A DNA stretch of 63,042 nt, filler included, from Sluysia triapertura (taxonomy: Eukaryota), in NCBI GenBank assembly GCA_046118255.1. It is 5 parts of 5 records of this genome, joined end to end, with 100 filler letters (N's around TTAATTAATTAA, not from the genome) between each part and the next. Parts side by side here need not be neighbours in the genome. Positions count along the whole stretch, not along the records: positions 11,156 to 23,956 come from JBJNIA010081150.1; 4 more parts are not named here. One strand, given 5' to 3'. A model generated the notes under the pieces. That model did no database searches and was not told the DNA's origin. It saw only the letters and a list, made by a program, of their open reading frames with translations. The number at the start of each line of letters is the position of its first letter. The stretch's first letter is position 1. Both the position numbers and the translations under genes were made by a program. Positions 20,101 to 23,100 of the stretch are shown in pieces.

Positions 20101-23100
20101 AATGAATTAAAAGAAAATTTCATCGTTCTGACTATTTCCTTGCACACCACGAGCAAGACTATCCATACAATAGAGGAGTAAGGGATTCTAAAAATAAACA
20201 CAAGTCTAGAAACAATGTACAAACAAATGGTAAAGTTGGTAATATTGAATATTATCGGCGATTTGCAGCGGGAAGTTATAATAAGTACTTGTAAGTACTA
20301 ATAATTAAAAACAACGCATTTAAGACCAAAAATTGAAAAAATGAATTAATCATGAATAACTTTAAGGTCAACACCACATATCAGTATAAATAATAGTTTG
20401 AAACGACACAACTGGATTATTTATCTAAAGAAACACTTTTTGCAATTGAATTATTTTAAATCTAATCGTACAATATAACTTTGAATTTAAAATACCGAGT
20501 TTTGAGAATTACCATTGAATTACCAATGGAGCCTTAACTACTTTCCTTTATAATGTTAACCGTTAGTTTATTAATATAAGGTTTTTCAACAGGTTTTAAA
20601 TTATTGTAATATAATTGTTAAAGAAAACCGTTTAATATAGTCGATTATAAATATGTATTCTATAAAGTTGATATCAATCAGGTTAATTGATCTTTTGTTT
20701 ATACATAAGTTTGTATACTTTAATATAAATAAAATTTATTATTTGAATTTATGTGTTTTTGCATACTACGATTGTAAAATTGCAATACACAAAGTAAAGA
20801 CTAATTAAACAAAATCTTGTTATTCGAAATTAGTCAAGCTGGAAAACTAATCCAATTATAAATTACATAGTTTTAATTTTGTAAACTTAATCATTATTAA
20901 TCGATTTTATAACGGTAGTAAAATACTTCTTTTTATTGATTCATTTAATAAGGATCAGGAAAATTTCAATTAAATAATCTCGCTTAAAAACGGAACACCA
21001 ATCTACAAAACTTAAACTTGGCCTGGCCCATCAGTATAACAATTACGCAATTAACTCATAAAATTAATCTCCTATTACTAAAAATCGATTATAATTCGGT
21101 AGTAAATTTATGTTTTCGAAATCCTATTTAAAGCTCGTTGTGAAGCGGAAATTCCATCGTTCGTAAATTCAACACATAAAATTTGGACTAAGAATCTAGT
21201 TAGATAATATTGCAATTATTCACGACATCGTTGTTCATTATTTAACTTAGTCAATAGACCTCCTAAGTTTTTTTCGTTTAATTTGAATTCATTAAAATCG
21301 TACGAACTGGCCCTTAAGTGTGTAAGTCTAGGATCGTAGACGGACTCTTATTAGCTATTTTTCAAAAGATAGGATACGTCATTATTTGTCACAAATCCCG
21401 TCATCTTTGGGTAATTGCTGGGAGATGATAAATTGGAAGTCGAAGCAGATTATTGTCGAAATTTAATTACTAAAATTTGTCAGCTTAGAACCAACTCAAA
21501 AGAATAAGGAAGTGCACAAAGTAATTAATTCTCTATTCCAATTTTTAATATCCTCAGCAATATGTAAGCGATCGCATTTTTGTCAAATATTCGCATATAA
21601 ATAGCTGGATAAATTAGTGAGAACTTCGCTTCCAAAGAAAGCTGCTTCAATACATTTGTAACAAACAGTGTGACTGAGACTTGATTTTTTACATTCGATA
21701 AACTTTGAAAACAATTTTATTATTACTATTGTGGTTAGTTAATCTACGTTTTTGTTATGTTTCATTAAATATAAGCACCAACATTTTGCGTGTTGTGTCA
21801 TTACTGAGAATTTGTATTTATTCTGTAATTATTAAGAATACGTTGTGATTAAAGAATAAGTAATAATTTGTATCTGTTTTGTGATTTCACACTAATTTAA
21901 TTATTTCGTTATTGTTAACAATTTTAAACAAAGACACGACACAATTCTTAATAAAATAACAATTTGTAATAGACAAAAGCGACTCATTAATGTGCTGAAG
22001 CAGAAACCAATGGTAGCAGAAATGACGCTTAGTTTTAAATTGTTCAGTATTCTATTTACATTTGTCAGTTTTCTTAGAGAACTATGCATCTACACAGTTC
22101 TAACTTTGTTATCTGTATTACATTAAGTAAAATATCTATTGTTGTAGATAGAGTTTCCGTATGCACTAGAATGTGGTTTTTCTTCTTTAAACATTGATAA
22201 GTTGTTTCGTCAATGCTGTTCGTTTCCTTCGCAGTCTCATTGTATTCTAATGATGTTCACCTGCCTTTGATGAATCGTCTAATTTCCGTGTCTTTCCACC
22301 ATGTATTACACTTTAAAATTTAAAATTTTGAATTTAAATACAAAAAGCACAAAGATAACTTAGTTTACAAAACGGAAAAATTTTAAAAAGAAAATTTCGA
22401 AATAGTGAAGACTGGCTTAATTAGATTCACATCGGAATGATTAGGGCACACACTGATCACAACTCCAAGAAGACATATTTTGATCTTACGTTTCGGAGAA
22501 GCAAACCAACCAATTGATCTCTTATTTAAAGACACGGCAAACTTTAAGTAATAATCGTATTGAGATATACAAAAACGTCTTTCAAGGTCGGTTCAAAGTT
22601 GTCGTTCATATTGAAAATGGAACTCTTTCCAAATTTTAAAAAATAGATCCGGATTCATTGAAAATTGTCAAATTTATACAATAAAATGAATGTTAAGAAA
22701 CAATGTGCATCAAATTCCTCGAACATTCATGAATTAATTTTCGAGGAGTAACTTCGTCTCATAACATATGTGCTCGATAATCGACATTTTAAAAAGCACG
22801 GTAATTTGTGGATCACAATTTTGCATTTGTCATCGGTCCTCCCACACTTTCTTCCATCTTTCAAGAATAACTTAAAAGAATACAACATTTAACGAGAAAA
22901 ATATAAAATACGACCATTTACTACCATCAACTACAAGCACAAATTAATGAGATTTTTCACGGAGAACAACCCGCCACGCACAAATTATCAAGGAGCATTT
23001 TTTGATTAAAATTGTATTTCACAATTAATAAACTAAAATTAAACCTGGAATTGCTATTTTCATATAATCAGGCCATTGTAATTCTGTCCGCTGTTTTCCT

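What the first reader, a model, noticed from the sequence alone, without database searches (positions are those of the whole stretch)
21244..21347. Dispersed two-hairpin motif with covarying stems: candidate undescribed structured RNA
Seen: five copies (6667-6740 -, 21244-21347 +, 36836-36928 +, 49377-49462 -, 59996-60093 +) share one layout. A 5' part contains a CTCC-like word, usually in a hairpin loop. A ~35-nt AT-rich linker follows, then a long hairpin and a GA(C/T)GRACTC-like tail. Four copies keep a nearly fixed apex (CC-CTTA-AGTGTG-TAAG); the 6.7 kb copy is more diverged. The flanking pairs swap compensatorily: TACGA/TCGTA, TATG/CATA, TGTGA/TCACA, TGACG/CGTTG, and CTGG/CCAG versus CAAG/TTTG and TAAG/CTTG. 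Many non-canonical pairs are G-T on the same strand, as expected of an RNA fold. Inference: structure was selected across subfamilies of a mobile element, as a packaging/dimerisation signal, translation element or self-cleaving RNA. The CCTCC word and GCGAA-like tail recall HDV-like ribozymes, but I could not build P1/P2/P3, so it is not a canonical one.
Basis: partly seen in the sequence, partly recalled or inferred. Interest (0 to 1): 0.72.

Follow-up and report, generated by a model that had tools for sequence, protein, structure and literature searches.

The report
Hairpin end of a high-copy repeat
The two-hairpin motif is real sequence, but it is the end piece of an ordinary, non-coding, high-copy mobile repeat in an AT-rich eukaryotic genome, and nothing I could test shows it to be a new structured RNA or ribozyme.

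Summary
The local copy (21244-21347) is as described. It has a 7-bp hairpin around a CCTCC word, an AT-rich linker, a 44-nt imperfect hairpin with the apex CCCTTA-AGTGTG-TAAG, and the tail GACGGACTC. The other four copies lie outside my piece and could not be checked.

The one public run that holds the locus shows unique depth (~20) up to 21249. Summed depth is then 2,800-4,600 for 21250-21549, low for 21550-21749, and 1,100-3,200 for 21750-21949. It returns to ~20 after 21950. The motif is therefore the left end of a ~0.7-kb high-copy repeat whose two ends are kept while the middle is often deleted.

This repeat has no ORF, no terminal inverted repeats, no tRNA-like head and no significant target-site duplication. 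The folds are no more stable than shuffled sequence (z +1.2, +0.1). Rfam gives no hit, including HDV-like and hammerhead models.

My best reading is a terminal cis-acting stem-loop of a non-autonomous transposable element. Most likely it is the 3' stem-loop and A-rich tail of a minus-sense retroposon. Covariation could not be tested, because every route to further copies failed or was closed. Interest is low.

The parts
21244..21270 (.). Hairpin 1: a 7-bp stem (AACTTAG/CTAAGTT) around a 12-nt loop holding the CCTCC word. It probably lies outside the high-copy repeat or at its very edge.
   Evidence: Read from the sequence. The fold has z -1.7 on the + strand and -2.1 on the - strand. Depth at 21269 is only 39, that is the locus's own contig plus one other.
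21268..21274 (.). T7 run (A7 on the minus strand). The boundary of similarity to the repeat family falls here. It is a candidate A-tail of a minus-sense retroposon, or a T-string boundary of a Helentron-like element.
   Evidence: A 1-base length variant is seen at 21269, and depth there is 39 against thousands further right. The run itself is listed.
21277..21297 (.). AT-rich linker, itself a weak near-palindrome (TTTAAT-TT-GAATTC-ATTAAA).
   Evidence: Read from the sequence. The DNA fold gives -1.1 kcal/mol and z -0.02, which is not special.
21299..21342 (.). Hairpin 2: a long imperfect hairpin with the apex CCCTTA-AGTGTG-TAAG. It is a local G+C island (50% G+C, against 24% in the left flank and 29% for the piece) and part of the high-copy family.
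   Evidence: Folds: -9.5 kcal/mol on the + strand and -7.6 on the - strand, with z about 0. The mean summed depth of 2806 in bin 21250-21349 cannot be reached without covering at least about 21315-21349.
21339..21347 (.). Tail GACGGACTC, which overlaps the base of hairpin 2.
   Evidence: It is the only exact match to GAYGRACTC in the piece. With one mismatch allowed there are 3 matches, against 3.8 expected by chance.
21275..21949 (-). A high-copy, non-coding interspersed repeat of about 0.7 kb in this copy. The left end plus block A (to about 21561) and block B (about 21803-21949) are abundant. The middle (21562-21802) is rare and often skipped in other copies. The strand given is the likelier sense strand, not a settled fact.
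   Evidence: Depth bins, joints (for example 21475->21803 in 2 contigs with at least 72 nt on both sides) and loose ends are. No ORF reaches 63 aa. There are no TIRs. All six homopolymer runs of 5 or more bases are T on the + strand.
21950..21965 (.). A-rich stretch (AATAAAATAACAATTT) just outside the right boundary of the repeat. It would be the tail if the element were plus-sense.
   Evidence: Read from the sequence. Depth drops from 3183 to 24.8 between bins 21850-21949 and 21950-22049.
21250..21259 (.). Candidate target-site duplication GT(C)AATAGAC, with its partner at 21966-21974. It is not significant.
   Evidence: 34% of shuffled window pairs share an exact 7-mer, and 20% reach the observed local alignment score.

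Best explanation
The motif is the terminal 70-100 bases of a non-coding, high-copy transposable element, about 0.7 kb long in this copy. It is not a free-standing RNA gene or a ribozyme. The long hairpin is family sequence inherited by descent.

My preferred mechanism is partly inferred. The element's sense strand is the minus strand. Read that way, the element ends with the conserved block GAGTCCGTC, then the stem-loop, then a 26-nt A/T-rich spacer, then A7. That is the layout of the 3' tail of a 'stringent' LINE-dependent retroposon. In such elements the partner LINE's reverse transcriptase binds the 3' stem-loop of the RNA and primes on the tail. Under this reading the upstream 'CTCC hairpin' is unrelated flanking DNA.

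What is shown: the high copy number, the position at the edge of the repeat, the dispensable middle, and the absence of coding capacity, TIRs and Rfam matches.

What is inferred: the sense strand, the retroposon class and the role of the hairpin.

I give about 0.6 to 'terminal part of a non-autonomous TE whose hairpin, if functional, is a cis-acting end signal', and about 0.35 to the specific minus-sense 3'-tail model. The confidence field carries the figure for the specific model.
For: -: depth is 20.9 in 21150-21249. It is then 2806, 3458 and 4593 in the three bins covering 21250-21549, then 606 and 202, then 1149 and 3183 up to 21949, and 24.8 after that.
- 1452 contigs were laid, and 875 of them are under 90% alike, so this is an old, large family.
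- joints link block A to block B (21475->21803, 21434->21860 and others). Both ends are kept and the middle is dispensable.
- depth at 21269, inside the T7 run, is only 39, so family similarity stops at the run.
- all six homopolymer runs of 5 or more bases in 21200-22000 are T on the + strand and none is A (two-sided P about 0.03). This fits a minus-sense transcript with A-runs and no T-runs.
- there are no ORFs of note.
- there are no TIRs.
- there is no tRNA-like head.
- there is no known RNA family.
- Stem-loop 3' tails shared by a LINE and its SINE, and needed for retrotransposition, are established for eel UnaL2 and zebrafish LINEs (PMC1636434, PMC4176376; abstracts seen).
Against: - On the minus strand the middle stem carries an A-C mismatch. 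The fold is -7.6 kcal/mol there against -9.5 on the + strand.
If true, that favours plus-sense RNA.
- No target-site duplication flanks 21275-21949.
- The sharp right (5') boundary and the retention of both ends are not what 5'-truncated LINE-type copies show.
- No partner LINE, no RNA evidence and no second copy were available.
- The tool itself warns that summed depth is not a copy number. A single very abundant short contig could in principle account for the 21250-21349 bin.
- The hairpin is not more stable than shuffles.
Confidence: 0.35

Rival explanations
1. Plus-sense reading: the motif is the 5'-terminal RNA module of a non-autonomous non-LTR retroposon spanning 21260-21965. Such a module would be an internal promoter, a processing or packaging structure, or both. 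It would be comparable in role to the 77-nt Pr77/L1TcRz module at the 5' end of trypanosomatid L1Tc/NARTc elements. In this reading the stems are kept by selection on RNA.
For: - I could not verify either point.
- The + strand folds slightly better (-9.5 against -7.6 kcal/mol).
- An A-rich stretch containing AATAAA follows the right boundary, and a 9/10 direct repeat GT(C)AATAGAC sits exactly where a duplication would be expected.
- Both ends are retained in deletion derivatives.
- A precedent exists for a conserved 5' promoter-plus-ribozyme module (PMC3185411, PMC3383444).
Against: - The duplication is not significant (P 0.2-0.34).
- Depth at 21269 is only 39, so the first 15 bases are not seen as high-copy.
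- Six T-runs of 5 or more bases lie on the + strand, including a T7 run inside the motif.
- No HDV-like or other ribozyme model matches.
- The fold is not better than shuffles.
Confidence: 0.15
2. DNA-level reading: the hairpin is a subterminal palindrome of a non-autonomous rolling-circle or other DNA transposon (Helentron/HINE- or Helitron2-like). It would be read as single-stranded DNA by a Rep/helicase, and the T-string would mark the element boundary.
For: - There are no TIRs and no target duplication.
- Both ends are conserved, the middle is variable or deleted, and there is no coding capacity.
- A variable-length T-run sits at the boundary.
- HINEs are described with T-strings at their boundaries, palindromes near an end and many deletion derivatives (PMC4067079).
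Against: - The 12-15-bp subterminal inverted repeats that define HINEs are absent. Only two 10-nt matches with one mismatch were found, which by my estimate is chance level.
- The canonical Helitron ends (5' TC, 3' CTRR, palindrome about 11 bp from the end) are not present in either orientation.
- The 44-nt hairpin is longer than the 5-10-bp HINE palindrome.
- The DNA fold has z about 0.
Confidence: 0.17
3. No function: the hairpin is a neutral palindromic relic inside an old repeat. The apparent compensatory changes come from freely choosing 4-5-nt complementary words in diverged flanks.
For: - The folds are indistinguishable from shuffles.
- In simulation, 57-64% of random flank pairs give a helix of 4 bp or more beside a fixed apex, and 24-30% give 5 bp or more.
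- 875 of 1452 laid contigs are under 90% alike, so the family is old.
Against: - The hairpin is a 50% G+C island in sequence of 24-30% G+C.
- Our copy shows no well-supported difference from the family in 21290-21420, while 21444-21533 is full of such differences. This suggests the end is better conserved than the body.
Confidence: 0.2

Closest known systems
3' tail stem-loop of stringent-type LINEs and their partner SINEs (eel UnaL2/UnaSINE1, zebrafish ZfL2; PMC1636434, PMC4176376)
   Same: A conserved imperfect stem-loop lies a few tens of bases from the end of a non-coding retroposon and is followed by a simple A/T-rich tail. Structure rather than sequence is what the reverse transcriptase needs, so subfamilies may differ in stem sequence.
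   Different: The sense strand here is inferred, not shown. No partner LINE is known and no duplications were seen. The tail is an A-run rather than a short tandem repeat. The stem carries an A-C mismatch on that strand.
Pr77 / L1TcRz module at the 5' end of trypanosomatid L1Tc, NARTc, ingi/RIME and SIDER elements (PMC3185411, PMC3383444, PMC4035085)
   Same: A conserved module of about 80 nt lies at one end of a whole set of autonomous and deleted retroposons.
   Different: Pr77 folds as an HDV-like double pseudoknot and cleaves. Here no HDV-like model matches, and P1/P2/P3 cannot be built: hairpin 1 leaves only 12 nt for P2, P3 and L3.
Subterminal palindromes of Helitrons and Helentrons/HINEs (DINE-1-like; PMC4067079)
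   Same: These are non-coding, very abundant elements without target duplications. They have a palindrome near one end, T-strings at the boundaries and variable middles.
   Different: There is no 5' TC or 3' CTRR and there are no 12-15-bp subTIRs. The hairpin here is much longer and imperfect.

Membership tests
HDV-like self-cleaving ribozymes | A match to a covariance model of the nested double pseudoknot (P1, P1.1, P2, P3, P4 and the catalytic C) | tested here: not met
   Rfam 15 found nothing at the motif. This covered the whole piece at E<=1 and 21180-21420 at E<=10 with lax filters. The best hit of any family was 18.2 bits (scaDm46E3, gathering score 61).
HDV-like self-cleaving ribozymes | A P1 helix enclosing the 5' strand of P2 and the P3/L3 hairpin | tested here: not met
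   If hairpin 1 is taken as P1, only 12 nt lie between its strands. That is too few for P2 plus a 3-bp P3 with a 6-8-nt L3.
Hammerhead, twister, pistol, hatchet and hairpin ribozymes | A match to the family's covariance model | tested here: not met
   Searches found no match on either strand.
Stringent LINE/SINE 3' tail | A stem-loop within the last ~60-80 nt of the sense strand, followed by a simple tail | tested here: inconclusive
   On the minus strand the hairpin (21342-21299) is followed by 24-26 A/T-rich bases and A7 (21274-21268), and family similarity stops there. The sense strand is inferred only from the T-run asymmetry.
Stringent LINE/SINE 3' tail | The same tail is present on an autonomous partner LINE | not testable with these tools
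   No other part of this genome could be read.
Stringent LINE/SINE 3' tail | Flanking target-site duplications | tested here: inconclusive
   There is none directly at 21275 and 21949. The only candidate (21250-21259 and 21966-21974) is at chance level.
Canonical Helitron | 5' TC, 3' CTRR, a 16-20-nt palindrome about 11 bp from the 3' end, and insertion between A and T (PMC4067079) | tested here: not met
   No CTRR lies within about 30 nt of the hairpin on either strand or at the right boundary.
Helentron / HINE (DINE-1-like) | 12-15-bp subterminal inverted repeats, 2-4 nt from the 5' end and 38-60 nt from the 3' end | tested here: not met
   Only two 10-nt inverted matches with one mismatch link the two end regions, and there is no exact 8-mer. 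By my estimate about 6 such matches are expected by chance.
Helentron / HINE (DINE-1-like) | T-strings of variable length at the boundaries and a palindrome near one end | tested here: inconclusive
   A T7 run with a length variant sits at the left boundary. The right boundary ends in TT only.
MITE (TIR DNA transposon derivative) | Terminal inverted repeats and a target-site duplication | tested here: not met
tRNA-, 5S- or 7SL-derived SINE | A Pol III-type head recognisable as tRNA, 5S or 7SL, and no T-runs in the sense strand | tested here: not met
   ARAGORN found none and Rfam found none. The + strand has six T-runs of 5 or more bases. The minus strand has none, but it shows no recognisable head either.

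The most novel reading that the evidence does not exclude
The hairpin and its conserved flank are a so far undescribed structured RNA module carried at the end of a retroposon family of an AT-rich eukaryote with very short introns. The module would be kept by compensatory change across subfamilies. It would act as a new kind of recognition, processing or self-cleaving element, unrelated to the HDV-like and hammerhead ribozymes known from other retroelements.
Probability: 0.07. Interest if true: 0.55.

Novelty: new member of a known kind. Interest (0 to 1): 0.2.

Why it matters
If the stems do covary across subfamilies, the motif would mark the cis signal by which this abundant repeat is copied. 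That would help to classify an unclassified family and to find its autonomous partner. As it stands, it is an ordinary feature of a transposable-element end, of use mainly for repeat annotation of this genome.

Tried and rejected
- Known RNA family: no Rfam match in either scan and no tRNA.
- Special thermodynamic stability: rejected for RNA and for DNA, on both strands.
- A second copy in the piece: none. The upstream stretch 20860-21073, which shares a 33-mer and a CTGGCCC word, does not align significantly with 21074-21360 (score 54 against 44 +/- 7 for shuffles; 23 of 300 shuffles reach it).
- Fetching copies from public collections by exact words: the 65 metagenome hits to the 16-mer apex are all chance, with no extension beyond 17-28 nt. 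Viral and prokaryotic genome contigs gave zero hits.
- Fetching copies through spurious ORFs: a word search with the open frame 21332-21463 found nothing. Ten ORFs of the region are not in the protein collection.
- A full-text search of papers for the apex sequence gave no hits.
- TIRs and target-site duplication: rejected as chance-level.
- Canonical Helitron ends: absent.
- I did not use the large representative-protein search.

Full report
**Setting.** Only places 11156-23956 are genome. The piece has 28.8% G+C, ATT microsatellites and no ORF above 110 aa. It carries one recognisable gene on the minus strand. The gene is a triose-phosphate/nucleotide-sugar transporter (TPT/SLC35-like), with exons at about 17251-18001 and probably 19351-19557. 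Its GT-AG introns are only 37, about 66 and 54 nt long, so this is eukaryotic nuclear DNA. I could not name the organism. I searched exons one by one, by reference, and did not join them. No contig looked human, and I did not fill any N.

**The observation.**
- A 7-bp hairpin (21245-21251 with 21263-21269) has a loop that holds the CCTCC word.
- A T7 run lies at 21268-21274.
- An AT-rich linker follows. It is itself a weak near-palindrome.
- A 44-nt imperfect hairpin spans 21299-21342. Its stems are TACGA/TCGTA, CTGG/CTAG (one G-T pair) and CTTA/TAAG, around the loop AGTGTG.
- The tail is GACGGACTC.

The four other copies lie in pieces I was not given. My piece has no second copy, even with three mismatches in the apex or one in the tail.

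**Is it a special fold?** No.
- The whole motif has an MFE of -14 kcal/mol, worse than the mean of its shuffles (z +1.18; 176 of 200 shuffles fold at least as well).
- The minus strand has z -0.29.
- Hairpin 2 alone has z +0.11 and -0.02. Hairpin 1 is marginal, at -1.7 and -2.1.
- DNA parameters give z between -0.3 and +0.5.

**Is it a known RNA?** No.
- Rfam 15 at E<=1 over the piece hits only a long palindrome elsewhere.
- On a 241-nt slice at E<=10, with lax filters, the best hit is 18 bits against a gathering score of 61.
- No HDV-like, hammerhead, twister, pistol or hatchet model matches. ARAGORN finds no tRNA-like head.
- If hairpin 1 were P1 of an HDV-like fold, only 12 nt would be left for P2, P3 and L3.

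**What it belongs to.** One public run holds the locus, as Logan contigs; no RNA run is listed. I laid its contigs on 19750-22749 at 80% likeness or more.
- Depth is unique (19-21) up to 21249.
- Summed depth is then 2806, 3458 and 4593 in the three bins covering 21250-21549.
- It falls to 606 and 202 for 21550-21749, then rises to 1149 and 3183 for 21750-21949.
- It is 24.8 after 21950.
- 1452 contigs were laid, and 875 of them are under 90% alike.
- Depth inside the T7 run, at 21269, is only 39.

The family therefore starts between 21270 and about 21315. Even at the highest depth seen anywhere (7880), 35 positions of that bin must be covered to give its mean. So hairpin 2 and the tail are part of a large, old repeat family, and they sit at its left edge.

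Joints such as 21475->21803 (two contigs, at least 72 nt on each side), 21434->21860 and 21477->21561 show that other copies lack the middle. Both ends are kept. Loose-end consensus sequences show that the family continues left of 21381 with indels, and that it has at least two alternative right-hand continuations after 21886.

In 21290-21420 no well-supported difference between our copy and the family is listed, whereas 21444-21533 has many. This hints that the end is better conserved than the body.

Two caveats apply. The tool warns that summed depth is not a copy number. One extremely abundant short contig could in principle inflate a single bin.

**What kind of element.**
- It has no open frame above 63 codons.
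- It has no terminal inverted repeats. Only two 10-nt matches with one mismatch link the ends, which by my estimate is chance level.
- It has no LTR-like TG..CA ends and no canonical Helitron ends (hallmarks from PMC4067079).
- The only candidate target duplication is GT(C)AATAGAC at 21250-21259 and 21966-21974. It is not significant: 34% of shuffles share a 7-mer and 20% reach its alignment score.
- All six homopolymer runs of 5 or more bases in 21200-22000 are T on the + strand, and none is A. This mildly favours the minus strand as the sense strand of a transcribed element.

Read on the minus strand, the element ends with a conserved block, then the stem-loop, then about 26 A/T-rich bases, then A7. 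Family similarity stops at that run. This is the layout of the 3' tail of stringent LINE-dependent retroposons, in which the partner's reverse transcriptase recognises the stem-loop (PMC1636434, PMC4176376). Under this reading the 'CTCC hairpin' is flanking DNA.

**Rivals.**
- *Plus-sense 5' module.* This would be functionally like Pr77/L1TcRz of trypanosomatid retroposons (PMC3185411, PMC3383444). It is opposed by the T-runs and by the depth at 21269.
- *Helentron/HINE-like DNA end.* This fits the lack of duplications, the T-string boundary and the deletion derivatives. It fails the subTIR test.
- *Neutral relic.* This cannot be excluded.

**The covariation claim.** I could not test it. Every route to more copies failed or was closed.

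Beside a fixed apex, random 14-nt flanks give a helix of 4 bp or more (G-T allowed, offset up to 3) in 57-64% of trials. They give 5 bp or more in 24-30% of trials. Two stacked helices in all five copies would be less likely by chance, so the claim is open rather than refuted.

**Verdict.** The 'undescribed structured RNA or ribozyme' reading has no support from energy or family searches, and its key evidence remains untested. The most likely identity is the cis-acting end of an unclassified non-autonomous transposable element, a known kind of thing. Interest is low unless a proper copy alignment shows significant covariation.

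Noticed in passing
window 12340-12500 (and 12509-12533): A near-perfect palindrome with 78-nt arms, 99% complementary, around a 5-nt spacer. 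The RNA fold is -106.8 kcal/mol with z -21.8. It gives sub-threshold hits to miRNA precursor models (MIR6288 at 51 bits against a gathering score of 74). A third, direct copy of its inner 25-mer follows at 12509-12533. It looks like a foldback or MITE-like element or an inverted duplication, and it is far more striking as a structure than the finding itself.
   Followed up: partly
window 17251-18001 and about 19351-19557, minus strand: A TPT/SLC35-like transporter gene with very short GT-AG introns: 37 nt (17847-17811), about 66 nt (17726-17661) and 54 nt (17484-17431). The 37-nt intron keeps the frame (..ESLG|LQNPVD..). Introns this short narrow down the kind of host, but the organism was not identified. 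Only one short relative (71% identity) turned up in the word search.
   Followed up: partly
window 20890-20922 and 21074-21106: A 33-nt direct repeat, 76% alike (core ATCGATT..TATAA..GGTAGTAAA), lies 184 nt apart just upstream of the motif. Both copies sit in bins of raised depth (193 and 100 against about 20). One contig of the run joins 21106 to 21306. This points to a second, lower-copy repeat that is sometimes found next to the hairpin.
   Followed up: partly
window 14968-15040 and 15557-15606: Two long (ATT)n microsatellites bracket about 520 nt, with a complementary (AAT)-rich stretch at 12289-12346.
   Followed up: no
window 21200-22000: All six homopolymer runs of 5 or more bases are T on the + strand and none is A. 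Differences between this copy and the family are dominated by G>A (27) and A>G (16), against C>T (10) and T>C (6). This is a strand asymmetry that might reflect an RNA or cDNA intermediate.
   Followed up: no
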